From Octopus sinensis (taxonomy: Eukaryota), in NCBI RefSeq assembly GCF_006345805.1, contig NC_042998.1:169632001-169696000 (forward strand): a stretch of 64,000 bases of DNA, read 5' to 3'. Below, in pieces: positions 4,565 through 62,427 of this stretch (position 1 is its first letter; each line of letters starts with the position of its first letter). The notes beneath the pieces were generated by a model. It had not been told where the DNA came from. It worked only from the letters and a program-made list of their open reading frames with translations, and did no database searches. A program made the position numbers and the translations under genes.

Positions 4565-5415
4565 TTTATATATGTGTGTATATATATACATAAATGTATA
4601 TTTATGGTCTGGCTAAAACTTCTTAGCAAATCACTTGTATGCTCTGGGTCTAATTTATAGTCAGGACCATTTTATATTAACATACATTACTAATATATTT
4701 GGAAAAATATATACTTCAGAACTCAATCTAGTTATGAAAATCAATGATTGATAAATACTGTTGATTAAGGCAAGTCAAGCTATGTTAACATTTGATGTTT
4801 GACTCTTATCACAGTAGTGCAAGATATTTCATACATTTGCTATAAAATAATTAGTTGAAAGAACACAGGAATATGGAAATGTTTTTCCTTTTAGATTCAT
4901 TAATGTATACATTAACTTTTGAATTTCAGTAACATTTTTCTTGGATGGTAAGGTGAGTCCCACAACCTACTGAATTGGAGAAGTGCCACTGCAGTATTTG
5001 TACAAGCTAGCAGAACTCATCTGTCTCCATTCAACTTGATAACTGGTAGAACCTCTGCAGGAGTTCAATCCAGTAATGCAAGCTGATAAAACACTCATAA
5101 ATTTTATTACTTCTATTGCTATTTACAACAGTCAGTTGTATTCGGTGTTAGCTATTTAAGGTGTCTTGACTTGAGATACAAGCTTGTAACTTGTTTTGGG
5201 AGGCATGAGGTGGGGGCATAAAGGATGCATATCCCAAGGCCTCAAAAGTGAACCCAGGAGGGGACAACCATTAATGATGGGGAATTTAATATATCCATCC
5301 AACCATATGTAACAGCATATTTAATTCCCTTTACTTTTCATGAATAAATATGATAAACTGTGATTTTTCATTACTAAATTTTAACCATTGCGGGTTTTTT
5401 AAAAACTGTTATTAA

Positions 5416-5820
5416 GGAGTGGCTGTGTGGTAAGTAGCTTGCTAACCAACCACATGGTTCCGGGTTCAGTCCCACTGCGTGGCATCTTGGGCAAGTGTCT
5501 TCTGCTATAGCCCCAGGCTGACCAATGCCTTGTGAGTGGATTTGGTAGACGGAAACTGAAAGAAGCCTGTCGTATATATGTATATATATATATATGTGTG
5601 TGTGTGTATGTGTTTGTGTATCTGTGTTTGTCCCCCTAGCATTGCTTGACAACCGATGCTGGTGTGTTTACGTCCCCGTCACTTAGCGGTTCGGCAAGAG
5701 ACCGATAGAATAAGTACTGGGCTTACAAAGAATAAGTCCCGGGGTCGATTTGCTCGACTAAAGGCGGTGCTCCAGCATGGCCGCAGTCAAATGACTGAAA
5801 CAAGTAAAGGAGTAAAAGAG
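5416..5820 (+). mobile_element. Family-A SINE, young full-length copy
   Basis: GGAGTGGCTGTGTGGTAAG A-box-like, GGGTTCAGTCCC B-box-like, internal (TA)(TG)n, tail CCGCAGTCAAATGACTGAAACAAGTAAAGGAGTAAAAGAG; CpGs intact. Confidence 0.9.
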
Positions 5821-13376: not shown

Positions 13377-14341
13377 GAATTTTTATCATATACCTCCACT
13401 CCCCGCCTCTCTTTTCACTGTTCTTTCATGACTTTATACTCCATTTTAAGCTGATTTGTTATCACTCCTATTTCTTACTTTTTCTATTTCTTTGTCTTTT
13501 CTCCTAAATTCACTTTCATTTCTATACAAATTCTTCTCCACATATTCTTTCCTCTTCCCCTTTCTCTCTGTACCAATTAAAGCTAGAGTTAATTGCACTA
13601 AATAACCTATGAAATCTAGCAACATTTTGGAGGACAGTGACCAGAGCCACTACTACACTATTAGTTGCCATAGAAGGAAGCCTAAATTTTTTCAGCATCT
13701 TTTTTTATTCTTTTTGTCCTTGACGTTACTTACTACCTTACCCTTACCCCCTCCTCCCCACCTGGATACCACAACCCCCAAATTTGATTCTTGCTTTGTT
13801 TTATTTTACAAACCCACAACTGAAGAAGAGCATAATCAAGAGAACACAACTTGAGAGAAAGATTAAGGTCATTAAGGATGGCTAAAAACTATGGGGTATG
13901 TTTATATATGAAAGAGAGCAAGAATGAGAGAAAGAAGAGAAAGAGAAAACAAAAAAAAAAGGAAGAGAGAGAGAGAGAGAGAGAGAGAGTTAATATCATG
14001 GAATACGGTTTAGTGGAGACTTTCATGTTGGTAGATAAGTACACAGCAAGTATTATTGGTTTGAATGGAAAATATATATACTTTCGGTTAGTGTTGAATT
14101 TCTTGTCTTTCATAATGATTTTAGATTATTTTATACATCATTTTATCAGGGACAAACCTGTAGTCTTCATATGATGCAGGATATGAAAAAAAAATAATGA
14201 AATTTTAAATTTTGTCAAAGGTAGGATTTTATAGAGAATAAAATGTTTTAATCTCTGCAGAGCTTCCTACCTTAAATCATATATTCTTCAGATATATTTT
14301 GCATATACATTGTATTTATTGTCTGATGTACTTCTATATTT

Positions 14342-16263
14342 GGTTAATATAGGGCGTAACAAATATCAGAAAATCAAAAAAAAAATGTGTGTAATAGGTG
14401 TAAAACAACTTCCTATGAACGAATATGAAAAAAAAAATTCGCGCACGCGAAAGGGGGGTGGGGGAGAGGCCTCGGAAAATTCACATCGGGAAGTTCCGAA
14501 AGCGTCTGAGGGGCTGACCCGGGCACCAAAACAAAAAAAAAATAGTGTAATATGTGTAAAACAACTTGCTCTAAACGAATACGAAGAAAAAAAATGCGCT
14601 CTCGAGAAAGAGGGGTGGGGGAGAGGCCTCGGAATATTTATATCGGGAATTTCCGAAAGCGTCTGAACCGGGCACAAAAACAAAAACAGCGTAATAGGTG
14701 TAAAACAACTTGCTCTAAACGACTATCATGAAAAAAATGCGCGCTCGCGAAAGGGGGGGGGGGGGAGAGGCTTCGGAAATTTCACATCTTCAGTCCACGG
14801 CCTTTAAACTAAGAAAAAATAGTGTAATTGGTGTAAAACTACTTGTTCTAAACGAGTATCAAGAACACACACTCACACATGAATCATAAACTCCGTATTT
14901 CGCAAAAAAAAAAAATAAAGAGAAGAAATTCTGGAAAAGTGAAGAAATGTTGGATCTCATTCCTTGGTTAAAGCTATTTTAAACATTAAATTTATGCTTT
15001 TCTTTGAAATAGTTCAGATATATGCAATTCTTCTCACTTATTAAGATGCATTTATCAGAAAAAAAGAGACAGAAAAAATTATTATTTTGTGTCAATCCTT
15101 CCCTAATTATCCTTTATTAATTAGTTTTGGCGTGTATTTTTTTCCCAAATTTATTTTTTCACCTTTACAACACTGTTTAGTAAAGCAATTAATTATCTTT
15201 ATAATTTGCATATTTGACTTATTAATCAAAATTCTCTAGATGTAATATATACTAAGTAATGCATCCTTCATTTATGTGTTCCGTTCTGTATTATGCATGC
15301 GTGACTGTTTGTATGTAAGTGTGTTTAACTGTGCACATGAATGTGAATATTAAAGAACATATTTATTTACTATGATTGTTATTTTCAGAACAAATAAATC
15401 TTTTGGCTGTTATGTTATTGATGTTATTATTATTGCTAGTTAAAGGGTGGTGACTTGGCTGAATTTTGAGTCTTGTAGTATGTAGTTGTGTTAGTCAATA
15501 TTCTGAGTTCAAATCCAACTCATTTCTTTATCATCATTATCGATGGACCACTCAAAGAGGTATGTATACATTATCATTTTCGTAACATAATTTCTGTAGT
15601 ATTTCAAGATGTTTCTGACACGTATTTTGATTCACATGGCGGAGATCCAACATTTCTTCACTTTTTCCAGAATTTCTTCTCTTTATTTTTTTTTTTTGCG
15701 AAATACGGAGTTTATGATTCATGTGTGAGTGTGTGTTCTTGATACTCGTTTAGAACAAGTAGTTTTACACCAATTACACTATTTTTTCTTAGTTTAAAGG
15801 CCGTGGACTGAAGATGTGAAATTTCCGAAGCCTCTCCCCCACCCCCCTTTCGCGAGCGCGCATTTTTTTCATGATAGTCGTTTAGAGCAAGTTGTTTTAC
15901 ACCTATTACGCTGTTTTGTTGTTTTGTTTTTGTGCCCGGTTCAGACGCTTTCGGAAATTCCCGATATAAATATTCCGAGGCCTCTCCCCCACCCCTCTTT
16001 CTCGAGAGCGCATTTTTTTTTCATATTCGTTTAGAGCAAGTTGTTTTACACATATTACACTATTTTTTTTTTGTTTTGGTGCCCGGGTCAGCCCCTCAGA
16101 CGCTTTCGGAACTTCCCGATGTGAATTTTCCGAGGCCTCTCCCCCACCCCCCTTTCGCGTGCGCGAATTTTTTTTTTCATATTCGTTCATAGGAAGTTGT
16201 TTTACACCTATTACACACATTTTTTTTTTGATTTTCTGATATTTGTTACGCCCTATATTAACC
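14342..16263. mobile_element. 1.9-kb non-autonomous foldback-type DNA transposon with ~620-bp modular TIRs and 8-bp TSD (Merlin-like termini)
   Basis: Arms 14342-14958 and 15642-16263 are near-perfect reverse complements; ends GGTTAATATAGGGCG / CGCCCTATATTAACC; CTATATTT at 14334-14341 and 16264-16271. Confidence 0.9.
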
Positions 16264-16427
16264 CTATATTTTTGTATTTATTTTGAATTCTTTTTTTTTT
16301 CATGCTTAAAAAATCCAACTTGGTTTCTTGTTACAAAAATAGGTATATCTGAAACCATTTGAAATTAATTTTTTTTTCATTCCTTTGCATTCTATAATAG
16401 AATTTATAAAAAAAAAATATTATTCTA

Positions 16428-16816
16428 GGTGCAAGAGTGCCTATGTGGTAAGAAACTGGCTTCCTAACCACATGGTTCTGCATTCAGTCCCACTGCTTGG
16501 CACCTAGGGCAAGGCAAGTGTCTTCTACTATAGCCTCAGGCCAAAGCCTTGTGAGTGGATTTGATAGATGGAAACTGAAAGAAGCCCATTGTATATATAT
16601 ATATATTTGTGTGTCTTTGTGCCTGTGTTTGTCTCCTACTGTTTAACAACTGGTGTTGGTGTGTTTACATCCCCATAATGTAGTGGTTTGTCAAAAATGA
16701 CCGATAGAAGTACCAGGCTTTAAAAATAAAAACAGTTCAGGGGTTTATTCATTTGACTAAAAATTGTTCAAGGTGGTACCCCAGCATGGCCACAGTCTGA
16801 TGACTGAAACACGTAA
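16428..16816 (+). mobile_element. Family-A SINE, diverged
   Basis: Both halves align with 5416-5820. Confidence 0.8.
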
Positions 16817-16979
16817 ATCATATTCACAATGATGTATTTATACAGAGGCAGTCTTAGTTCTCAGATCAAAGGAGGAGCTCTGTTCTCTTAAATACATTTT
16901 GTGTTTATTTTTTAACCAGATGGATAGGTGTAAGAGAACTCCAAATGACTGCCATTGCTTGAATCTCAACATCTGTATC

Positions 16980-18830: not shown

Positions 18831-20968
18831 TGTGTTTGTGCATGTGCTCATAACTATCTTCTTACCTTCACAACATTACAGAATTTAATACTTGTGAGTG
18901 TTATTGTCATGTAAGTGGTATCATTCATTTCCAATCTTCCATGAAGACATGTCTAGTCATTGAGAAACATTTCCTTCCTTGAAAATGGGTGAGGGTTGGT
19001 GATAGGAAGGTTATCTAGCTCTAGAAAATTCTGCCTCATCAAATTTACCAAATCCATTCTCAAGGCTTTGGTTGGCCCGAGGCTATAGTAGAAGACACTT
19101 GCCCAAGGTACCATGCATTGGGACTGAACCTGGAACCATGTGGTTAGTAAGCAAGCTACTTACCACACAGACACTCCTGCCTCTTGTTTTCAGTCGTGTT
19201 TGTTTGTTTGCCTGTGGACAAGATATCTCAAGAACCACTGGATGGATTTGGATAAAACTTTCAGTGATGTTTGGCCTTGTGACTGGCATGAACTGGTTAG
19301 ATTTGGGGATTGATCTGGTACTGGACAAGGATTCTGGATTATTTTTCTTGTTTTTGTACTTTTTTTTTTGAGAGTAGATAGGTTCATTTTTAGTATTTTT
19401 GATTGTGAGAGCAGTCGAGTTTATTTCAGATATTCTCATTTTAAAAATCATCTCTGGCTAATCGTTGAGGGGATGTTAGTGTTGCCTTGGCGGAGGTTTG
19501 CGCTCTCTGAGTTCTCGTTTAATATTGTTATTTTACTTACTATCGTTACCTCAGTTGTTTTTCACAGCTAGATTCCCTTCATGCTTCAAATTACTGAACC
19601 AAAAAGAAAAGAAAATTTTTGTTAATCAGTCTATTTTGGTAATAAAAGTAATATCTTTCCTCAGACCCCAAAATTTTCTTTGTAGTTTTAAGGTTTGAAT
19701 TCATGATCATGTGCTTAGTTATCTAACATTTTAAAGGAAAGTTACTCAGCTGTCAAGTTACTAAATTAAGTACTGAGTTAGCCAAAATAGTTGCATTTTA
19801 AACATTATATTTAGCATTTAGTCAGGGTCTTATACATTTTATGTCCTTCTTCCTGTTCTTTTCTTGTCTTGCAAATTACTTAGTGGCTTCACTCATGCTG
19901 GTGGCATGAAAAACACACCTAATACACTCTGTTAAGTGTTTGTTATTAGGAAGGGCATCTAGCCATAGAAACTTTGCCAAAGCTAACATTGGAGCTAAAC
20001 TTAGCCCTGCAGCATGCTAGATCTTGTCAATCCATGCGAGGAGGGAAGTGGGCATTAAATGGTGGTGATGATGATGATGATGAAAAAGTTACATTCATTA
20101 TTGCTGTTCTTGTTGTTCAGTTCCTGGTCGGATGTGATCAAATAGACCTATGATCAAAGACATTTTGTTGTTTCTTATTTTCAGAAATAATATATCTACA
20201 AATACTTTATACTGAATGTGGAAGCTGCTCTCTTTATGGCTTGGGATGTTCTTTATTTTATTTCAGAAATTAGTTTATAAGAATTTGAATTCAATGATAA
20301 TGTTTGTTCAATTCTATTATCACAATGGTGACAATTCTACTATAGCAATATGTTTTTACAGTTGGCGAGCTGGCAGAATCATTAACACATTGGACAAAAT
20401 ACTTTGTGGCATTTCTTCCAGCTCTTTATGTTTCAAATCCTGCTAAGTTCAACTTTGTCTTTCATCCTTTCAGAGTCAATAAAATAAAATACCTGTCAAG
20501 TATTGGGGTTGATATAATAGACTTGTCTTCACCCTTCAAAATTGCTGGCCTTGAACTCTGCAATGGATCAGCAATAACATAACCCCATATTTAATCAATA
20601 AAAATTTCTTCAAAACACCTCTCTGTAACAAACCACTCTAAACCTTAATTACCTCTCCACTCAGACCCACATACCCGAGGAAGATTTTAACTCAACAGAG
20701 ACTATATAAAGCCAAGGTTAACTCCAATGCGTCACAGTCTAATAATGGCTTAATTGGCTGAAACTTCGAAGTTACTGTCATCAATATTCTTATCTTTTAT
20801 CTTTTACTTGTTTTAGTCGAATGATTCTACCCCTTAACATTTTTTTTCTTTTTAAAGCCTGGTATTTATTCTGTCTGTCACTCTTGCTGAACTGCTAAGT
20901 TACAGGGACATAAACACACCAGCACTGGTTGTCAAGTGGCAAGGGTGAGGGGGACAGACAAAGACACA

Positions 20969-21347
20969 GACCTATTGAGTCAAGTACATCAACATCAAAA
21001 TGAATATCAATTGGAAATAGTAGTTGTGATACCTGTGCCAGTGGCACATAAAAAGCACCATCCGAACGTGGCCGTTGCCAGCACCGCCTTGACTGGCTTC
21101 TGTGCCGGTGGCACATAAAAAGCACCAACCGATCGTAGCCACTGCCAGCCTCCCCTGGCACCTGTGCCAGTGGCACGTAAAAAGCACCCACTATACTCAC
21201 GGAGTGGTTGGCGTTAGGAAGGGCATCCAGCTGTAGAAACACTGCCAGATCAGACTGGAGCCTGGTGCAGCCTCCTGGCTTCCCAGACCCCAGTCGAACC
21301 ATCCAACCCATGCTAGCACAGAAAACGGATGTTAATGATGATGATGA
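20969..21347 (+). mobile_element. RTE LINE 3' UTR (family E)
   Basis: Starts GACCTATTGAGTCAAGTACATC as at ~48025; GTGGCAC(A/G)TAAAAAGCACC subrepeats; (GAT)n tail. Confidence 0.85.
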
Positions 21348-21394
21348 TTGGGACCGCGTGTGTACCATTGGCGTGTGTACTTTCCTTCTCCTAT

Positions 21395-23905: not shown

Positions 23906-24411
23906 GAATGGTTAGTATAACGTCTTTGCACTTGGCCAAATTTATTATATTTCTTATCCAAATGATATTGTCACTGTCTCAGGTAAAGCTGTAGAATGAA
24001 TTCAAAGGAATTATTCCATTTACTTCTCTTCCCTGACTTTACATTATAATGCACAAAAGGTTTCTTTTTAACAAAAATGGATAACAATGTGATGGAGAAA
24101 GTTATAAATGGCTACAGATTTACAAGGCACTTAATTAGATTTCTGTCTTGCCAACCACCTATATGAGATGTAAATGATATTTTGGATCGATTCATTATCT
24201 ACTTTTCAGTGATTTCCTTTGATCTATACAATTTCAAGGAAAGAGGTTATATTGTTACTCTGAGCAGCTATTAATTCATCCACTGAGCCATTGAGTCATC
24301 TAAGAATTTTTTTATCCTTCTATCTGTTTTGTCTGTCTGTTCTATTTGTCCACCCCACCCTCTCTGTTGCAGCTGCAGCTACTGTTGTTCAGCTCTGAAC
24401 TATAGAAACAC

Positions 24412-24810
24412 AGGAGTGGCTGTGTGGTAAGTAGCTTGCTTACCAACCACATGGTTCCAGATTCACTCCCACTGCATGGCACGTTGGGCAAGTGTCTTCT
24501 ACTATGGCCTTGGGCCGACCAAAGCCTTGTGAGTGGATTTGGTAGACGGAAACTGAAAGAAACTTGTCGTATATATATATATATATATATGTTTGTGTGT
24601 CTGTGTTTGTCCCCCAACATCGCTTGAAACCAATGCTGGTGTGTTTATGTCCCTGTCACTTAGCAGTTTGGCAAAAGAGACTGATAGAATAAGTACTAGT
24701 TCACAAAGAATAAGTCCTGGGGTCGATTTGCTCAACTAAAGATGGTGCTCTAGCACGGCCAGAGTCAAATGACTGAAACAAATAAAAGAATAAAAAGAAA
24801 AAGAAATAAA
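24412..24810 (+). mobile_element. Family-A SINE
   Basis: Both halves match 5416-5820. Confidence 0.85.
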
Positions 24811-31214: not shown

Positions 31215-31600
31215 TTACTTGTTTGTCATTAGACTGCGGTCAAGCTAGGGCACTGCCTTGAAGAATTTTTAGTTGAATAAATAAACCCTAGTACATAAAT
31301 TCATTGCTAAGCTTAGTACTTATTCTGTCGGTCTCTTTTCACTGAATCACTAAGTTACAGGGATGTAAACACACCAACACCAGTTGCCAAGCAGTAGCAG
31401 GAGACAAATAAAGACACACACAAACACATACACACACACATGATGGACTTCTATCAGTTTCTGCCTAACACATCCACTCACAAGGCTTTGGTCAGCCCAA
31501 AGCTTTAGTAGAAGACACTTGCCCAAGGTGCCATGCAGTGGAACTGAAACCAGGAAACATGTAGTTGGGAAGCAAGCTTCTTACCACACAGCCACACCTG
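31215..31600 (-). mobile_element. Family-A SINE, diverged
   Basis: Both halves are recognisable in reverse orientation. Confidence 0.75.
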
Positions 31601-33399
31601 CACCTTATGACATCAACAATATACAGTTTTCACTGTTAAGAATAAAATTTCTAAAATGGTTAGAGAAATTTGCTTTGCTCCAATGGTAGAACATTTGTCA
31701 TGTCTACAGGGGATCTGAGTTTGTGTCCTACAGGCCTTCAACTTCTTCCCAAAAGGGTTTTTCAACCTATCGTTTACATGCTGATATTTATAGCTTAATG
31801 TGCTTTGAGATCCAGTTCCCAAAAAGAAAATATATATTTTTCTGTCCTTGTTTTTGCTACTAACTTCTAGTCAACCATAATCAAGCATGCACTAATCAAA
31901 AGCATTCCCATCATGATCATCATGACTTTCAAAGAATATCTAAGGCTATGCTATCTAATGTGCCTTTCTGTTTTTTAAAACAATAGAGTATGGTTTAAAG
32001 GAGATCTGTTATTTTTAGCAGTTCAGTTGACCATGTAGATACCCTACCATATAAGTTTGATTCTCTATCATTTAGCTATCCCTCGTAGACATACTAGTAA
32101 TTTCATAAATTTTATAAATTCATTATCTTTATTTTGTAACCATAGATAGATTTTATAATATATAATTTTGACTAATGAAAAAGAAATTCAATACTAGGAT
32201 GAAAGCATACCATACATGGCATTTAACATTTTGAAATTTTGCTGAAAGTTGAGTATAAACACTTGAACAAGCAATTTACAATTTTTTACTCAACCTTACT
32301 AAAAAAAAAAAAATTTAATTCTGCACTTATAAATTTACTGCCACATACCTTCATGAATGCATAATCATATAACAATAATATTTAATTTTATATGTTTGAT
32401 TCCCTACTCATCTCTCACATACATAAAAATCTTTGTAAATTTATGATTCTTGTAACAGTACTTCTTCAGACAATTTTTACAATTTATCATCTTTACAATG
32501 TAAAGAAAAGAAAGAAATGCATACCACCCCATGACATTTAACTTAGCAAAATTTTGCTGGAAAGTGTACAACCAATATAAACACTTGACTGTGTAGTTTA
32601 CAATCTTTGTCCAACCTGCTAAATTTTTTACATACCCTGGATTACTTTCATACTGGACTAACTACATATATCAAAATCTCTAGCTTCAAACAGGATTGAG
32701 AGATTTATCTACAGGAAATTTCTGGTTTGGTCTGTGTACTTTTCCTTATAACTGGTACAGTTTAATCAAATCCAGCTATTGCAATAAAGGCAGTTAGTCC
32801 AGTATGAAAGTAGCTTCATTTGAACACGTATAGTTTTGCATATATACAAGTGTACATATATTTACAACCACATAACCTCGTGTATATACTCACATAATTA
32901 ATTTGATTTATCTACCTCTCATAGATAAAGTCAGTAGTACATCTGATGTGTACAAGAGTACAATTGTATGAAAGCAAAGCATCTGTAATTAAGTTCTTTA
33001 ACCATTCCCTTTTTTCCATTTGTTTCAGTCATTAGGTTGCAACTATCCTGGGTACTGCCTTGAAGGGCTTTATTGAACAAATTATTGACCCCAGTAATTA
33101 TTCTCCTTGCCCTCACTCCAATTCTTTTCAACATCACTTGCTATCTCTGTTATCTCCCCTCATGCTCTTATGGAACATCCCCCTCTATCCCCTCTGGACT
33201 ATATGCACTACCCCCACTGTTACCTCTGGGCAGGCCTCTCCCTCTCTCTCACTCTGACTGTTTTTCTAACTCCCTCCCACCTTCCTTGTCCTTCTGAAGT
33301 AGTCAAGTATTTCCTCAGTAGTAAGAGGGCTGCCTCAGTCATCCCTTGATCTCTTGGTTCTACTCCCTCTCTCAGCCGAAAGGTCCTTAGATTGTGAGC

Positions 33400-34372: not shown

Positions 34373-34506
34373 ATCTCAGCAGTGATTATGAGTGTATGTG
34401 TATATATAATGGGAAGCTTTATGAAAATAGACAAAAGACGAAGGCAGGTGGAAAACAAACAAACAATTGTATTAGTATGGCGCTCAGGAAATATAAATAA
34501 AACAAG

Positions 34507-34544
34507 TCTTTAACGTTTCGAGCCTACGCTCTTCAACAGAAAGA
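34507..34544 (-). ncRNA. Hammerhead-like motif, variant core (same family as 62726)
   Basis: TCTTT CTGTTGA A GAG cgtagg CTC GAAAC GTT AAAGA. Confidence 0.55.
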
Positions 34545-34545
34545 T

Positions 34546-35089
34546 ACGTGTGTATGTATGTATGCATGTATGTATGTATGTATATATATAGGTATGTATA
34601 TATATATGTAGGTATGTATATATATATGTATGTATATATATTTGTGTATGTATGTATATATATATATATATGTATGTGTATGTATGTGTGTGTATGTATG
34701 TGTGTGTGTATGTATGTATGTATGTGTGTGTATATATATATATGTATATATATATATGTATATATATATATATGTGTGTATATATATGTATGTGTATATA
34801 TATGTATGTGTATATATATGTATGTATATATATATATGTATGTGTATATATATGTATGTATATGTATGTATATGTGTGCATATATATTTATGGATGTATG
34901 TGTGTATATATATGTATGTATATGTATGTATATGTGTGTATATATATATATGTATGTATATGTATGTATATGTGTGTATATATATATATGTATGTATATG
35001 TATGTATATGTGTGCATATATATTTATGTATGTATGTGTGTATATATATGTATATGTATGTATGTGTGTGTATATATATGTATGTATAT

Positions 35090-35125
<36 letters not shown>

Positions 35126-35285
35126 GTATGTGTATGTATGTATATATATGTGTATATATATATATGTGTGTGTGTGTATGTGTATGTATAGATGTGTATA
35201 TATATGTCTATGTATATATATTTATATATTATGTATACATTGATTTATATGTACATATACACACATTCACGCGTGTGTGTATGCG
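34546..35285. repeat. ~740-bp compound (TA)/(TG)/(TATG) microsatellite
   Basis: Directly visible; source of the long YIYI/VCVC pseudo-ORFs. Confidence 0.97.
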
Positions 35286-35569
35286 TATATTTATAAAAAA
35301 CAGGAATGGATCCTAACTTCTGTTAGCCAGCTTAGCTGCTATTTTATTTCACTATAACTGTCGTTATAACAGTTATGGAATTTAAATGTTTAACAATGTA
35401 TTCAATAGACCAGTCCCTCAGACTCGCACCTGTCGTGCTTATATTTATCCGTTTGACTCTGTCTGCCTTTTACTATTATGTGCGTACATATATTTATACA
35501 GGTGTGTGTGTGTATATATGTATATATATATATTATATGTATATATATATATATATTCATATGTATATT

Positions 35570-37522: not shown

Positions 37523-37982
37523 TATATATTTATAAAAGAACAGGAATGGAATCTGATTTTTGTTAGCCAGATTAGCTGGCATTTTGCTTTTCTTTACTTT
37601 GCTTTATCTCATAACAGTACACTACAACTGTTGTTGTAACAGTTATAAAATTCAAATTTCCAACAATGTGTTCAGTCAACCAGTCCCTCAGACTTGCACC
37701 CTGTTGTGCATGTTCATATTTATCTATATGTTTCTGTCTTTTACTGCTATATGTGTGTGAATGTATATATATATATATATATAATGTATGTGTGTGTTTT
37801 ATTTTCCTATTTTGTGTTTCAGTCATTGAACTATTGCCATGCTGTGGCACTTCTTGAAGGTTTTTAATCAAATGAATTGACCCCATTACTTATTGTTAAA
37901 CAAACCAACACCAGTTCTCACACAGTGGTGGGGACAAACACAAAAGCACATATACACACACAGATAGTGTGTGTGTGTGTGT

Positions 37983-38283
37983 GTGGCACATAACAAGCAC
38001 CATCTGAATGTAGCTGGTACCAGTGCTCCTTGACTTGCTCCTGTGCTGGTAGCACGTAAAAAACACTATCCGAACATGATTGATGCCAAGCCCGCATGAC
38101 TGGCTCCTGTAAAAAGTGTCCGCTACACTCTCAGAGTGGTTGGCATCAGGAAGGGCACCCAGCTGGAGAAACATTGCCAGATCAGATTGAAACCTGGTGC
38201 AGCCGCTCGCTTTCCAGACCTCAGTCAAACCGTCCAACCCATGCCAGCATGGAAAACAGACGTTAAATGATGATGATGATGAT
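37983..38283 (+). mobile_element. RTE LINE 3' UTR (family E) inserted in the microsatellite of a minus-strand family-A SINE
   Basis: Family-E motifs and (GAT)n tail; SINE-A halves at ~37810-37960 and 38283-38310. Confidence 0.75.
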
Positions 38284-38460
38284 ATACGACAGGCTTCTTT
38301 CAGTTTCCATCTATACTCACACACACAAGCCTTTCCTATTAATTTTTTTCAAATAATATAAGCGCGGGCTACTCACCCCAAGATTCCGAGTTTGACACCA
38401 AGCAGTGACCTATATAGTAATAGTAGCACTTTCATTATGTTCAAATCAATTTTTTATAGG

Positions 38461-38849
38461 CATAGGAGTGGCTGTGTGGTAAGTAGTTTGCTTATGAACC
38501 ACATGGTTCCAGATTCTGTCCCGCAGCATGGCACCTTAGGCAAGTATCTTCTACTATAGCCTCGAGCCGACCAAAGTATTGTGAGTGGATTTGGTAGACA
38601 GAAACTGAAAGAGCCCGTCATATAGATGTATATATGTGTGTGTGTGTTTGTGTGTCTGTGTTTGTCCCCCCAACATTGCTTGACAACTGATGGTGGTGTG
38701 TTTACATCCCTGTAACTTAGCGGTTTGGCAAAAAGAGACCGATAGAATAAGTACTAGGCATCCAAAGAATAAGTCCTGGGGGCGATTTACTCAATTAAAA
38801 GTGGTGCTCCAGCATGGCCACAGTCAAATGACTGAAACAAGTAAAAGAG
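38461..38849 (+). mobile_element. Family-A SINE
   Basis: Both halves match 5416-5820. Confidence 0.88.
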
Positions 38850-57834: not shown

Positions 57835-58787
57835 AAGTAAGATAGGGGTTATGAAAGTAACCCACTATGGGATATCAGTTATTCAATATACTGCTGGTAA
57901 AGTACCCAAATACTAAATACTATTAATTGCAATGCTCTTAATTCATTTATTGTATTGAATGGGTGAAGGTAAAAAATATTTTTTACCATAAATTCATAAT
58001 ACAAATAAGAAAATGGAGAAACAAATTCCTATCGATTATCAATTTACGGATATTACAATTTCACATTCATCATCATTTAACGTCCGCTTTCTATGCTAGC
58101 ATGGGTTGGACGGTTCAACTGGGGTCTGGGGAGCCCGAAGGCTGCACCAGGCCAGTCAGATCTGGCAGTGTTTCTACAGCTGGATGCCCTTCCTAATGCC
58201 AACCACTCCGAGAGTGTAGTGGGTGATTTTATGTGCCACCGACACAGGTGCCAGACGAGGCTGGCGAACGGCCACGCTCAGATGGTGTTTTTTATGTGCC
58301 ACCGACACAGCACGCTCGGATGGTGTTTTTATGTGCCACCGACACAGGTGCCAGATGAGGCTGGCGAACGGCCATTTATTAATTATACAAATGGGAACAT
58401 CAAAACGATATACATCAATATGTAATATAATAATAATAAATAAAATAATACAAATAAACTGCTCCTTACAGCTGTTTCAGCCTATGGTCAAGAGTCAATT
58501 CAACTTAAATTGCCTATAGATGCCATTGTAATATAGTCCTAGGCATTAAAAATTATATTTGTATGTTTAAATAACCAATAATATAGGCAATTTAAGTTGA
58601 ACTGACTCTTGACCATAGGCTGAAACAGCTGTAAGGAGCAGTTTATTTGTATTATTTTATTTTTTATTATTATATTACATATTGATGTATATTGTTTTGA
58701 TGTTCCCATTTGTATAATTAATAATGTGAAATTGTAATATCCGTAAATTGATAATCGAAAGGAATTTGTTTCTCCATTTTCTTATTT
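57835..58787. mobile_element. Penelope-like pseudo-LTR remnant with a ~200-bp inverted partial duplication
   Basis: 58582-58787 is the reverse complement of 58003-58067 plus 58376-58518; carries a hammerhead 3' half GAAAC AGCT GTA; homologous to 62890-63276. Confidence 0.6.
58068..58375 (-). mobile_element. RTE LINE 3' UTR (family E) inserted in the left arm of the inverted duplication
   Basis: CATCATCATTTAACGTCCGC..ATGTGCCACCGACACAG subrepeats; absent from the right arm. Confidence 0.85.
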
Positions 58788-59873: not shown

Positions 59874-60661
59874 TATATATATATTTGTGTGTGTGTGTGT
59901 GTGTATGTATGTAAAAGAGAGCGAGTTCACAAAAGTTTTCAAACAATCATTCAAAATATATCTACAATTGATGTAGACCTCTCACTTAATCTAGCTTCAA
60001 AGTCTTCACTAACACTGGCTTGTACATATGGTTGTTATATAATTAACATTTTAAAAAATTGTTTTCTTTTTATTCAGTTTATACTTAAACGTTACTGGAG
60101 TTCGTATATCAACAGGGTAATATACACACGCACTTTTGAAGCAAAAGAAAACAACTAGCTAAACATAACTTCATATGAAAGGTTGGGGGGGGGGGAATGT
60201 TAATATAAATATAAATCATTTCTAGATTGTCTGGAGAAGATTTTAAATATGATTTTAGGATATTTAGTATCTTTTTCTTTTTTGCTTTTGCCCCCAACCA
60301 CACTGTTATTTTGAAGTTATTACAGGTTATTACCGAAACTTCAATTTTGTAATTTCCGATGTTATTTATTAAATGATTTCTTTTTTCTGGTTTTGATAAT
60401 TGGTCAAAAACTCTCGTATTTAAAGTTTGTTATGAAATTGTAATGGTAACTTAATCTTATGTTAAAATCTTTTGAAAAGTGTTGTTTTATTCGAAATTCC
60501 CGTTTTGCCCTAGTCATTTATTGAAAATCCAATAAACAAGTTCTTTGTGTAAAAGGTTCAATATCATTTGATCTCTGTAGAGACGTTTGAATGTGATGTT
60601 ATGTTATGTTTTTTCTTCCATATGTAGAGTTCTGTATTTTTAATTATCTGTGATGTCTGTG

Positions 60662-61380
<719 letters not shown>

Positions 61381-62427
61381 GAATTTAATTATCTTCTTCA
61401 ACTTAATACCCTAAAGAAAATCTCTCATAACCAGGTGCTGATGCATCCGAATAAATTAATTAAAGATTCAGTTGAATTATTTTATCCCATTTATTTATTT
61501 ATAAATATAAAATAAGATTGCGTGTGAAATACTTTGTACCTTGTTTATTTACTTCGTAAGTAAACTACTTCTGAACGTTTGCTCAACGTGTTGCTACGAA
61601 CGTGGCATCGATCTAGAATAGATCGGGGATTAAGTTAAAAATTTTGAAGAACGAAAGACTGATAATAGGGAAGAAAAAAGGATATGCTGAGAAAGAGAGG
61701 GTGGCAGTTTGAATTAGCAGGGCTTAATAATTTTTAGATGATCAATTTAGAAGATTTCATTATATATAGCAAAGTAACTTCTACATGATTGCACCCAGCA
61801 TTTTATCACAAAATATTGAGAAACGGTTATTAACACAGTTGTTATAGTAACCGTTTAATATCGTTGGATGACCTCATAATATTTATAACTGGCAGCTGTT
61901 GTACTTTCTTTATTGTATTTTATTTATTTTATCGTTGTTTTGATCCAGTAGCTTTGACATATTTATTTATCTTTTTGTAACGACATATTTGAGCATTATT
62001 TGCTTGTTGTTTTGGGGCAAGTGATTAATAGTATTTCTTATTGATCAATGATGCGCATTTTCGCCCTGTTGACGAGAGCAACCAGCTGTTTATCTCAACT
62101 CATTCAACACTTACATCTCTCTCTTTCTCTCCTCTTTCACATACATATGCACACACAAACAGAAGTTCACTTACTAACATTTACTAACACGCTTCACCTA
62201 CTACTTTGTGTTTCTTCCATCGTTTCTACTTCCCATGAACAAGCAAATTATCTGGAAACGGAGGCGTACGCAGTGGGTGGCATTCCTCTACTTCTCAGTT
62301 CACGTCTAACTCCCCTCGTTTTTGTCCCCAACTTCACCCTCATGGTACTCCTTGCACACCGCTACTTACTAAAGCCCAGTTTCCATCACTGATATGATTC
62401 CCTACACAACTTGAAGCACATTTATTC

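What the first reader, a model, noticed from the sequence alone, without database searches (positions are those of the whole stretch)
14342..16263. Young foldback element with ~620-bp TIRs built from 133-156-bp modules and an 8-bp TSD
Seen: arms differ by only a few substitutions and homopolymer lengths; GG..CC ends; perfect CTATATTT TSD. Each arm has four GTAAT.GGTGTAAAAC.ACTT motifs (14391, 14547, 14691, 14824), is GC/CpG-rich and encodes no transposase. Established: GG termini with 8-9-bp TSDs fit Merlin; modular long TIRs fit foldback architecture. Inference: a recently mobile, possibly undescribed non-autonomous family. If transcribed it would form a long dsRNA hairpin, relevant given extensive A-to-I editing in coleoids.
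Basis: partly seen in the sequence, partly recalled or inferred. Interest (0 to 1): 0.7.

Follow-up and report, generated by a model that had tools for sequence, protein, structure and literature searches.

The report
Foldback-like non-autonomous DNA transposon in Octopus
This is a real 1.9-kb "foldback" jumping-gene insertion with no gene of its own in an octopus genome; it is a fairly ordinary mobile element, mildly interesting because its ends carry the signature of Merlin transposons, which I found to be recently active in octopus.

Summary
Window 14342-16263 is a 1922-bp element with two inverted arms (617 and 622 bp). The arms differ by 2 substitutions and 4 small indels and surround a 683-bp AT-rich loop. 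The ends are GG..CC, flanked by an exact, non-extendable 8-bp duplication, CTATATTT. Each arm has a unique 31-bp outer end, three full modules (156/144/133 bp) plus a partial fourth, and a unique inner domain. A 21-bp motif occurs 4 times per arm and nowhere else in the window. No frame encodes a protein domain. CpG is undepleted in the arms (o/e 1.28 against 0.35 for the window).

Best reading: a young, non-autonomous, foldback-like cut-and-paste transposon, moved in trans. Repeat ORFs and SINE copies place the window in the genus Octopus. I recovered an 8.7-kb Merlin family from O. sinensis and O. vulgaris with GG..CC ends, 354-bp TIRs and 8-bp TSDs. That is the same signature, but there is no sequence similarity. 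Merlin is therefore favoured (about 0.45) and not shown; Mutator/foldback is the main rival.

Copy number, an autonomous partner, transcription and RNA editing could not be tested. It is a new member of a known kind, of low to moderate interest.

The parts
14334..14341 (.). Left copy of the 8-bp target-site duplication, CTATATTT
   Evidence: Read directly. It is identical to 16264-16271 and cannot be extended (14333 T vs 16263 C; 14342 G vs 16272 T). Chance about 3-7e-5.
14342..14958 (+). Left arm (TIR), 617 bp
   Evidence: alignment to the reverse complement of the right arm: 2 substitutions and 4 indels. Identity collapses after 14958/15642.
14342..14372 (+). Unique outer (terminal) domain starting with GG; presumed transposase cleavage and recognition end
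   Evidence: The terminal 30-mer is found only at the two ends. It is not related to the module motif beyond chance. The function is inferred.
14373..14528 (+). Module 1 (156 bp)
14529..14672 (+). Module 2 (144 bp)
14673..14805 (+). Module 3 (133 bp)
14806..14865 (+). Partial module 4 (first ~60 bp only, including the conserved motif)
   Evidence: family D3; alignment.
14391..14411 (+). Conserved 21-bp motif GTAATNGGTGTAAAACNACTT, first of four per arm (others at 14547, 14691, 14824; mirrored at 15757, 15889, 16038, 16194 on the - strand); candidate subterminal transposase-binding sites
   Evidence: 8 matches, 0.02 expected, none elsewhere in the window. The binding role is inferred by analogy with the subterminal repeats of other TIR transposons.
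14866..14958 (+). Unique inner domain of the arm
   Evidence: it is paired with 15642-15735 but is not part of the tandem modules.
14959..15641 (.). Middle domain (loop), 683 bp, 27.8% GC, non-coding
   Evidence: Composition. No Pfam domain in six frames. No Rfam or tRNA match. No relative elsewhere in the window.
15642..16263 (-). Right arm (TIR), 622 bp, with the same domains as the left arm in mirror order
16264..16271 (.). Right copy of the 8-bp target-site duplication, CTATATTT

Best explanation
The region is one genuine insertion of a non-autonomous, foldback-like class II (cut-and-paste) DNA transposon in an Octopus genome.

Proposed mechanism (inferred, not shown): a DDE transposase encoded elsewhere binds the unique GG-terminated ends. 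It probably also binds the four reiterated 21-bp motifs in each arm. It excises the element and integrates it at a target cut with an 8-bp stagger, and repair of that stagger produced the CTATATTT duplication.

The element carries no gene. About 64% of it is two 617/622-bp inverted arms, each built as outer domain, about 3.5 tandem modules, then inner domain. The arms surround a 683-bp non-coding middle.

The insertion looks recent. The transposase superfamily is most likely Merlin (my estimate about 0.45), otherwise Mutator/MULE (about 0.25) or another superfamily with 8-bp TSDs. The confidence given below is for the general statement (a real, non-autonomous, foldback-like TIR transposon insertion), not for the Merlin assignment.

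Side effects expected from the structure: a roughly 612-bp perfect-stem hairpin if transcribed (a substrate for ADAR or Dicer), and cruciform or hairpin-prone DNA.
For: Shown:
- Near-identical arms with sharp outer and inner boundaries.
- An exact, non-extendable 8-bp TSD at the IR boundaries, chance about 3-7e-5.
- GG..CC termini that are unique in the window.
- The motif occurs 4 times per arm in a fixed orientation, 8 matches against 0.02 expected.
- Modules are only about 73-80% alike among themselves while the arms are more than 99% alike. The tandem array therefore predates the event that made the arms identical.
- No protein domain in any frame, and no RNA family.
- CpG o/e is 1.28 in the arms against 0.35 in the window. 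This fits a recent arrival in a CpG-depleted genome.
- Predicted RNA fold of -1261 kcal/mol against about -440 for shuffles, with 612 of 617 left-arm bases paired to the right arm.

For Merlin:
- GG termini and 8-9-bp TSDs define Merlin (PMC8101967).
- Merlin is unusually abundant in O. bimaculoides, with 191 hits (PMC8101967). Among molluscs it is almost restricted to cephalopods (PMC10294476).
- An 8.7-kb Merlin in O. sinensis and O. vulgaris has 99.6%-identical copies, identical transposase at 3 loci, GG..CC ends, about 354-bp TIRs and 8-bp TSDs GCAAATCT and CAAGGCTT.
- That family also has a 471-bp MITE derivative with TSD CAAAAGAG/CAGAAGAG.

Closest architecture: Tetris of Drosophila virilis, which has a TIR outer domain, tandem repeats, an inner domain, a non-coding middle, and an 8-9-bp TSD (PMC4079207).
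Against: - Only one copy is known, and the window holds no other copy or fragment. Repetitiveness, the basic property of a transposon family, is therefore not shown.
- No paralogous or orthologous empty site could be found.
- The element has no sequence similarity to any of the 8 Merlin-bearing loci fetched, 5 of them from Octopus.
- The window contains no Merlin transposase remnant.
- The 617-bp TIR is longer than the published Merlin range of 24-462 bp.
- Arm identity can be maintained by intramolecular gene conversion, so it is not a clean clock.
- Several arm differences lie in homopolymers and could be assembly errors.
- Searches of protein, metagenome, viral and prokaryote collections found nothing. 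The control shows these collections barely sample octopus non-coding DNA, so these nulls say nothing about copy number.
Confidence: 0.8

Rival explanations
1. The element is the same kind of object, but it is mobilised by a Mutator-like (MULE/Phantom-type) transposase, the superfamily to which most foldback elements have been assigned.
For: - MULEs are defined by long TIRs (over 100 bp) and 8-10-bp TSDs, and Muta1 makes 8- or 9-bp TSDs (PMC5225508).
[quoted passage not shown] Tetris, the closest structural analogue with an 8-9-bp TSD, was tentatively placed there (PMC4079207).
- MULEs occur in all mollusc genomes analysed (PMC10294476).
- The 617-bp TIR is beyond the published Merlin range.
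Against: - Nine bp is the commoner MULE TSD (from my own knowledge).
- The conserved 5'-GG terminus is a Merlin hallmark (PMC8101967).
- The one recently active family I could reconstruct in Octopus with GG ends, long TIRs and 8-bp TSDs is a Merlin.
- No MULE transposase could be sampled, because the searches were exhausted, so this rival was not tested directly.
Confidence: 0.25
2. The element is a non-autonomous member of another superfamily that makes 8-bp TSDs: hAT, P/Galileo-like, Novosib or Zisupton.
For: - An 8-bp TSD is typical of hAT.
- Galileo (P superfamily) shows that foldback architecture arises independently in other superfamilies (cited in PMC4079207).
- Novosib and Zisupton were detected mainly in cephalopods among molluscs (PMC10294476).
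Against: - The terminus GGTTA fits neither the hAT (YARNG) nor the P (CANRG) terminal consensus (from my own knowledge of Yuan & Wessler 2011, not tested here).
- hAT TIRs are normally short.
- Galileo makes 7-bp TSDs.
Confidence: 0.12
3. The region is not a mobile element. It is either an assembly artefact (a chimeric foldback read) or a local inverted duplication made by replication template switching.
For: - It is single-copy in the window.
- Inverted-duplication artefacts do occur in long-read assemblies.
- Some arm differences sit in homopolymers.
Against: - An exact 8-bp direct duplication lies precisely at the outer boundaries of the inverted repeat.
- The middle is a 683-bp unique sequence rather than a point of symmetry.
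- The arms differ by a 7-bp and a 2-bp indel and by 2 substitutions, so they are not copies of one read.
- The arms have a composition foreign to the flanks, with CpG o/e of 1.28 against 0.26-0.40.
- The GG..CC ends match a known transposon signature.
Confidence: 0.05
4. The structure arose from two independent head-to-head insertions of a roughly 620-bp element.
For: Neighbouring inverted copies of one repeat are common in octopus genomes (PMC5625713).
Against: - Neither arm has its own TSD. The left arm is flanked by CTATATTT and ATTCCTTG, while the composite is flanked by a perfect TSD.
- Neither arm has terminal inverted repeats of its own.
- The window contains no solo arm.
Confidence: 0.02

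Closest known systems
Tetris, a foldback transposon of Drosophila virilis (Dias et al. 2014, PMC4079207)
   Same: Both have long TIRs divided into a unique outer domain, internal tandem repeats and an inner domain. Both have a variable non-coding middle domain, no ORF, an 8-9-bp TSD and an unknown autonomous partner.
   Different: Tetris is from an insect host and has an unrelated sequence. Its repeat unit is 220 bp against 133-156 bp here. It was tentatively placed in Mutator. Its tandem repeats have expanded into satellite arrays, and nothing of that kind is seen in this window.
Merlin superfamily (Feschotte 2004; PMC8101967), including the 8.7-kb Octopus sinensis/vulgaris family reconstructed here (L025 265-8996, L027 252-8997) and its MITE (L028 6779-7249)
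   Same: All share 5'-GG..CC-3' termini, 8-bp TSDs, long TIRs (about 354 bp in the Octopus family) and the same host genus. Non-autonomous derivatives exist, and there is evidence of recent activity in Octopus.
   Different: There is no detectable sequence similarity in the termini or interior. The Octopus Merlin TIRs hold microsatellite rather than 133-156-bp modules. The arms here are 617 bp, longer than the published Merlin range of 24-462 bp. No IS1595-type transposase is linked to this element.
Drosophila FB, and MULE/Phantom-related foldback elements (as summarised in PMC4079207 and PMC5225508)
   Same: These elements also have very long modular inverted arms that form most of the element. 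Most copies are non-coding, and their TSDs fall in the 8-10-bp range.
   Different: FB makes 9-bp TSDs (my own knowledge). FB arms are built of much shorter subrepeats and usually have little or no loop. No MULE transposase link was tested here.
Galileo (P superfamily foldback-like element of Drosophila; cited in PMC4079207)
   Same: It has long TIRs with multiple internal transposase-binding sites. This serves as the model for reading the four motifs per arm as binding sites.
   Different: Galileo makes 7-bp TSDs, has different termini, and its full copies encode a THAP-type P transposase.
Palindromic Harbinger MITE of Xenopus tropicalis (PMC5625713)
   Same: It is a self-complementary repeat that folds on its own into tight dsRNA and is heavily A-to-I edited.
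   Different: It is about 200 bp long, belongs to another superfamily with a 3-bp TSD, and its editing has been shown experimentally. Here, transcription and editing are untested.

Membership tests
Class II TIR (cut-and-paste) transposon, non-autonomous | Terminal inverted repeats with sharp ends | tested here: met
   Arms of 617 and 622 bp with more than 99% identity; the outer ends fall exactly at 14342 and 16263.
Class II TIR (cut-and-paste) transposon, non-autonomous | Target-site duplication directly abutting the TIRs | tested here: met
   CTATATTT on both sides, 8/8, not extendable; chance about 3-7e-5.
Class II TIR (cut-and-paste) transposon, non-autonomous | No transposase ORF | tested here: met
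   No Pfam domain in any frame; only short or read-through ORFs.
Class II TIR (cut-and-paste) transposon, non-autonomous | Multiple dispersed copies in the genome, each with a different TSD | not testable with these tools
   There is one copy in the 64-kb window. No cephalopod genome is searchable. The nulls are uninformative, as the control shows.
Foldback-like elements | Inverted arms make up most of the element | tested here: met
   1239 of 1922 bp (64%) lie in the arms.
Foldback-like elements | Arms built of tandem subrepeats between an outer and an inner unique domain | tested here: met
   Three full modules and one partial module per arm (156/144/133 bp). The outer domain is 31 bp and the inner domain 93 bp.
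Foldback-like elements | Non-coding middle domain | tested here: met
   683 bp, 27.8% GC, with no protein domain and no RNA family match.
Merlin superfamily | Conserved terminal 5'-GG-3' (PMC8101967) | tested here: met
   GGTTAATA... at the left and ...TATTAACC at the right.
Merlin superfamily | 8- or 9-bp TSD (PMC8101967) | tested here: met
   The TSD is 8 bp.
Merlin superfamily | TIR length within the described range (24-462 bp) | tested here: not met
   The arms are 617 and 622 bp. An Octopus Merlin reaches about 354 bp, so the published range is probably not a hard limit.
Merlin superfamily | Termini shared with an autonomous copy encoding a DDE_Tnp_IS1595 transposase | tested here: inconclusive
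   Eight Merlin-bearing loci were fetched, five of them from Octopus (L025-L029). None resembles the element. The window has no Merlin remnant. O. bimaculoides alone has 191 Merlin hits, so the sample is very small.
Mutator/MULE (including foldback-type) | Long TIRs (over 100 bp) and an 8-10-bp TSD (PMC5225508) | tested here: met
   TIRs of 617/622 bp and an 8-bp TSD.
Mutator/MULE (including foldback-type) | Termini shared with an autonomous copy encoding a MULE transposase | not tested
hAT superfamily | 8-bp TSD with short TIRs that have a YARNG terminus (from my own knowledge) | tested here: not met
   The TSD length fits, but the terminus is GGTTA and the TIRs are 617 bp.

The most novel reading that the evidence does not exclude
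This is the first foldback-type derivative of a Merlin transposon. On this reading it represents a cephalopod family whose CpG-rich modular arms fold on their own into dsRNA of about 600 bp. Such a family would contribute to the exceptionally high load of long perfect dsRNA and to the hyper-editing reported for Octopus (PMC5625713). Foldback architecture has so far been tied to Mutator and P, not to Merlin.
Probability: 0.15. Interest if true: 0.5.

Novelty: new member of a known kind. Interest (0 to 1): 0.3.

Why it matters
If the family proves to be multi-copy and Merlin-driven, it would add a third superfamily in which foldback architecture evolved. It would also give a handle on recently active DNA transposons in Octopus. 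Those genomes are about half repeats and have an unusually high content of long, near-perfect dsRNA-forming loci and of A-to-I hyper-editing.

A self-folding element of about 600 bp in a transcribed region would be a ready-made substrate for ADAR or Dicer, and a hotspot for hairpin-mediated deletion or ectopic recombination.

As a single insertion it is of local interest only. It could serve as a presence/absence marker between individuals or sister species.

Tried and rejected
1. Other copies in the window. The terminal 30-mer, the 21-bp motif and a blastn search with the whole element found none.
2. A paralogous empty site. The joined flanks hit only a downstream SINE, not the insertion point.
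3. RNA gene origin of the loop or modules. A sequence in the loop looked like a tRNA T-arm, but ARAGORN and Rfam (gathering threshold and E<=10) found nothing.
4. Copies recovered through translated arm ORFs. The protein database gave no hit and the exact look-up gave no hit. The control with a high-copy repeat ORF showed that the database holds only annotated Octopus proteins, so these nulls are uninformative.
5. Motif scans of the metagenome, viral and prokaryote genome collections. These gave only single chance matches of at most 37 bp.
6. The idea that the terminal 34 bp is a diverged copy of the module motif. Rejected: the alignment scores are no better than shuffles.
7. A hunt for the autonomous partner. 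I took an O. bimaculoides Merlin protein from the supplement of PMC8101967 and found relatives. I then fetched 8 loci. None shares sequence with the element. L030-L032 share no repeats with the window, so they are probably not from Octopus.
8. Retrieval of the orthologous locus. None of the Octopus proteins found is encoded identically in the window, so no orthologous locus could be fetched.
9. Protein remnants in the element. Pfam gave nothing above noise.
Full report
**The observation**

The window was read at 14200-16400 and scanned for repeats. I aligned 14342-14975 against the reverse complement of 15625-16263. The arms are 14342-14958 (617 bp) and 15642-16263 (622 bp). They differ by two substitutions (14582 C/T, 14760 G/T) and four indels: 2 bp, 7 bp (AAACAAC), 1 bp in a G-run and 1 bp in an A-run. 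Identity collapses abruptly at 14958/15642, leaving a 683-bp middle (14959-15641).

The outer ends are GGTTAATATAGGGCG... and ...CGCCCTATATTAACC. The terminal 30-mer occurs only at these two places in the window. Directly outside the ends lie CTATATTT (14334-14341) and CTATATTT (16264-16271). This is an exact 8-bp direct repeat that cannot be extended in either direction. By base composition, such a match has a probability of about 3-7e-5.

The motif GTAATNGGTGTAAAACNACTT is found at 14391, 14547, 14691 and 14824, and mirrored at 15757, 15889, 16038 and 16194. That is 8 matches where 0.02 are expected, with none elsewhere. Module spacing is 156/144/133 bp on the left and 132/149/156 bp on the right. 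The left-right differences are the arm indels.

'GC-rich' is only relative: the arms are 40% GC and the modules 44.6%, against 36% for the window. 'CpG-rich' is striking: observed/expected is 1.28 in the arms, 0.35 in the window and 0.26-0.40 in the 5-kb flanks.

**Anatomy**

Each arm consists of four parts:
- a unique 31-bp outer domain;
- three full tandem modules, plus the first ~60 bp of a fourth;
- a unique 93-bp inner domain.

The modules are only about 73-80% alike among themselves, whereas the two arms are more than 99% alike. The tandem array is therefore old relative to whatever made the arms identical.

Each full module holds four features:
- an A-run;
- the conserved ~40-bp block containing the 21-bp motif;
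- a CpG palindrome (TTCGCGCACGCGAA, CTCTCGAGAG or GCGCGCTCGCG);
- a G-run followed by a CGGAA...TTCCG inverted pair.

I tested whether the terminal domain is a diverged copy of the module motif. It is not: the scores are no better than shuffles.

The element has no coding capacity. Its ORFs are short or are read-throughs of the arms, and no Pfam domain appears in any frame. There is no tRNA and no Rfam family, even at E<=10. The middle domain is AT-rich (27.8% GC) with a host-like CpG deficit (0.53). It has no relative in the window.

**Is it a transposon insertion?**

Four features are the classical footprint of a cut-and-paste insertion:
- an exact TSD at the precise boundaries of the inverted repeat;
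- sharp termini;
- a composition foreign to the flanks;
- internally reiterated subterminal motifs in a fixed orientation.

The alternatives fare poorly. An assembly palindrome would have no 683-bp unique centre, no TSD, and no 7-bp or 2-bp arm indels. Two independent head-to-head insertions would each carry their own TSD, and neither arm does.

What is missing is repetition. The window holds no other copy or fragment and no paralogous empty site. No cephalopod genome could be searched.

The indirect routes gave nothing:
- the arm ORF against the protein database and by exact look-up;
- the motif against the metagenome, viral and prokaryote collections (only chance matches of at most 37 bp).

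A control shows these nulls carry no weight. A high-copy repeat ORF from the same window retrieved just 13 proteins, nearly all of them annotated Octopus 'hypothetical proteins'. Its exact sequence is not on record either.

**Host**

That control also identifies the host. The hits are Octopus vulgaris and O. bimaculoides proteins at 45-91% identity. The window's ~400-bp SINE is 82-89% identical to copies in O. sinensis and O. vulgaris loci. The species cannot be named.

**Which transposase?**

The literature gives two families that fit:
- Merlin has TIRs of 24-462 bp with a conserved terminal 5'-GG and 8- or 9-bp TSDs (PMC8101967).
- MULEs have TIRs over 100 bp and 8-10-bp TSDs, and Muta1 makes 8- or 9-bp TSDs (PMC5225508).

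Most foldback elements have been assigned to Mutator. Tetris of D. virilis is architecturally the closest analogue: an outer domain, 220-bp tandem repeats, an inner domain, a non-coding middle, an 8-9-bp TSD and an unknown partner. It was tentatively placed there (PMC4079207).

On the other side, Merlin is unusually abundant in O. bimaculoides, with 191 protein hits. Among molluscs it is almost restricted to cephalopods (PMC10294476).

To test the Merlin link directly, I took an O. bimaculoides Merlin protein (KOF79200.1) from the supplement of PMC8101967. The window has no Merlin remnant. A database search with this protein led to Octopus loci L025-L029.

L025 and L027 are on two O. sinensis chromosomes, and L026 is from O. 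vulgaris. They carry an identical 305-aa transposase. L025 and L027 are 99.6% identical over about 8.75 kb. Reading the boundaries gives:
- termini GGCGATGTTTCG... and ...CGAAACTATGCC;
- TIRs of about 354 bp at 96% identity;
- perfect 8-bp TSDs, GCAAATCT in L025 and CAAGGCTT in L027.

A 471-bp MITE with the same ends sits at L028 6779-7249, with TSD CAAAAGAG/CAGAAGAG.

So Octopus holds a recently active Merlin family with exactly the signature of the finding: GG..CC ends, an 8-bp TSD, long TIRs and non-autonomous derivatives. However, the finding shares no sequence with any of these loci or with three further Merlin contigs. Its 617-bp arms also exceed the published Merlin range.

Merlin is therefore favoured (about 0.45) but not demonstrated. 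MULE/foldback is at about 0.25 and other superfamilies with 8-bp TSDs at about 0.12. hAT and P termini do not fit GGTTA, though that rests on my own knowledge of the consensus termini.

**How it most likely works**

Shown: the structure, the TSD, the absence of genes and the folding potential.

Inferred:
- A trans-acting DDE transposase recognises the unique GG ends. It probably also binds the four reiterated 21-bp motifs per arm, by analogy with the multiple transposase-binding sites in the long TIRs of Galileo and other elements.
- It excises the element and inserts it at an 8-bp staggered cut.

The insertion appears young for three reasons: the TSD is intact (16 of 16 bases), the arms differ at 2 of 617 aligned sites, and CpG is undecayed in a CpG-depleted genome. 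One of the two substitutions is a CpG/TpG difference (14582). The other lies in a G-run, where modules 1 and 2 agree with the right arm. Two caveats apply. Intramolecular conversion between arms can keep them identical, and the homopolymer differences may be assembly errors.

**Consequences**

Folded as RNA, the element gives -1261 kcal/mol against about -440 for shuffles. In that fold, 612 of 617 left-arm bases pair with the right arm.

O. bimaculoides has an exceptionally high hyper-editing rate and a high fraction of loci able to form long perfect dsRNA. Self-complementary repeats are edited on their own in Xenopus (PMC5625713). Nothing here shows that this locus is transcribed.

**Verdict**

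This is a real, well-preserved, non-autonomous foldback-like DNA transposon insertion in an Octopus genome. It carries a Merlin-type signature and its autonomous partner is unknown. It is a new member of a known kind. Whether the family is already in Repbase or Dfam could not be checked. Interest is low to moderate (0.3). It would rise if the family proves to be a Merlin-driven foldback that contributes to the octopus dsRNA and editing load.

Noticed in passing
window 16420-16817; also 5417-5808, 24411-24786, 31215-31605, 38466-38845 and more than 15 others: A SINE-like repeat of about 400 bp is present in more than 20 copies in the window (69-80% identical to the copy next to the element). 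It is 82-89% identical to copies in O. sinensis and O. vulgaris loci L026 and L028.
   Followed up: partly
window 20895-21368, 37896-38324, 58093-58425: A second dispersed repeat family. Its accidental ORFs match many 'Hypothetical predicted protein [Octopus vulgaris]' entries, so TE fragments are annotated as genes in that assembly.
   Followed up: partly
window 34484-35316 and 60564-61401: Long microsatellite-like blocks (TA/TG/CA-rich, with strong GC skew) produce fake ORFs of 170-260 aa in several frames.
   Followed up: no
L025 265-8996, L027 252-8997, L026 (O. sinensis GCA_006345805.1; O. vulgaris GCA_951406725.2): An 8.7-kb Merlin element with an identical 305-aa transposase at three loci. 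Copies are 99.6% identical and have GG..CC ends, about 354-bp TIRs and 8-bp TSDs (GCAAATCT, CAAGGCTT). It carries nested SINE copies (638-981 and 5412-5755) that are shared by the copies, so they moved with it. The family is evidently recently active.
   Followed up: partly
L028 6779-7249 and L028 5415-7751 (O. sinensis VCDQ01004827.1): A 471-bp MITE of the same Merlin family (ends GGCGATGTTTCG, TSD CAAAAGAG/CAGAAGAG) sits about 70 bp downstream of the annotated transposase ORF, inside a second, older Merlin. That older Merlin has ends GGTACTATTT.../GGTGCTACTT..., imperfect inverted-repeat blocks spread over the outer ~370 bp at each end, and no clear TSD.
   Followed up: partly
window 14440-14455, 14596-14610, 14739-14752 and their mirror sites in the right arm: Each module contains a short CpG palindrome whose sequence varies but whose symmetry is kept (TTCGCGCACGCGAA, CTCTCGAGAG, GCGCGCTCGCG). 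This is followed by a G-run and a CGGAA..TTCCG inverted pair. It may be a second protein-binding or hairpin feature.
   Followed up: no
L030 3971-9196 (ENA ERZ26222911 contig): A Merlin transposase gene is followed by three evenly spaced (1473 bp) 104-aa DDE_Tnp_IS1595 fragments, a tandemly repeated Merlin piece. The contig shares no repeats with the window, so it is probably not from Octopus.
   Followed up: no
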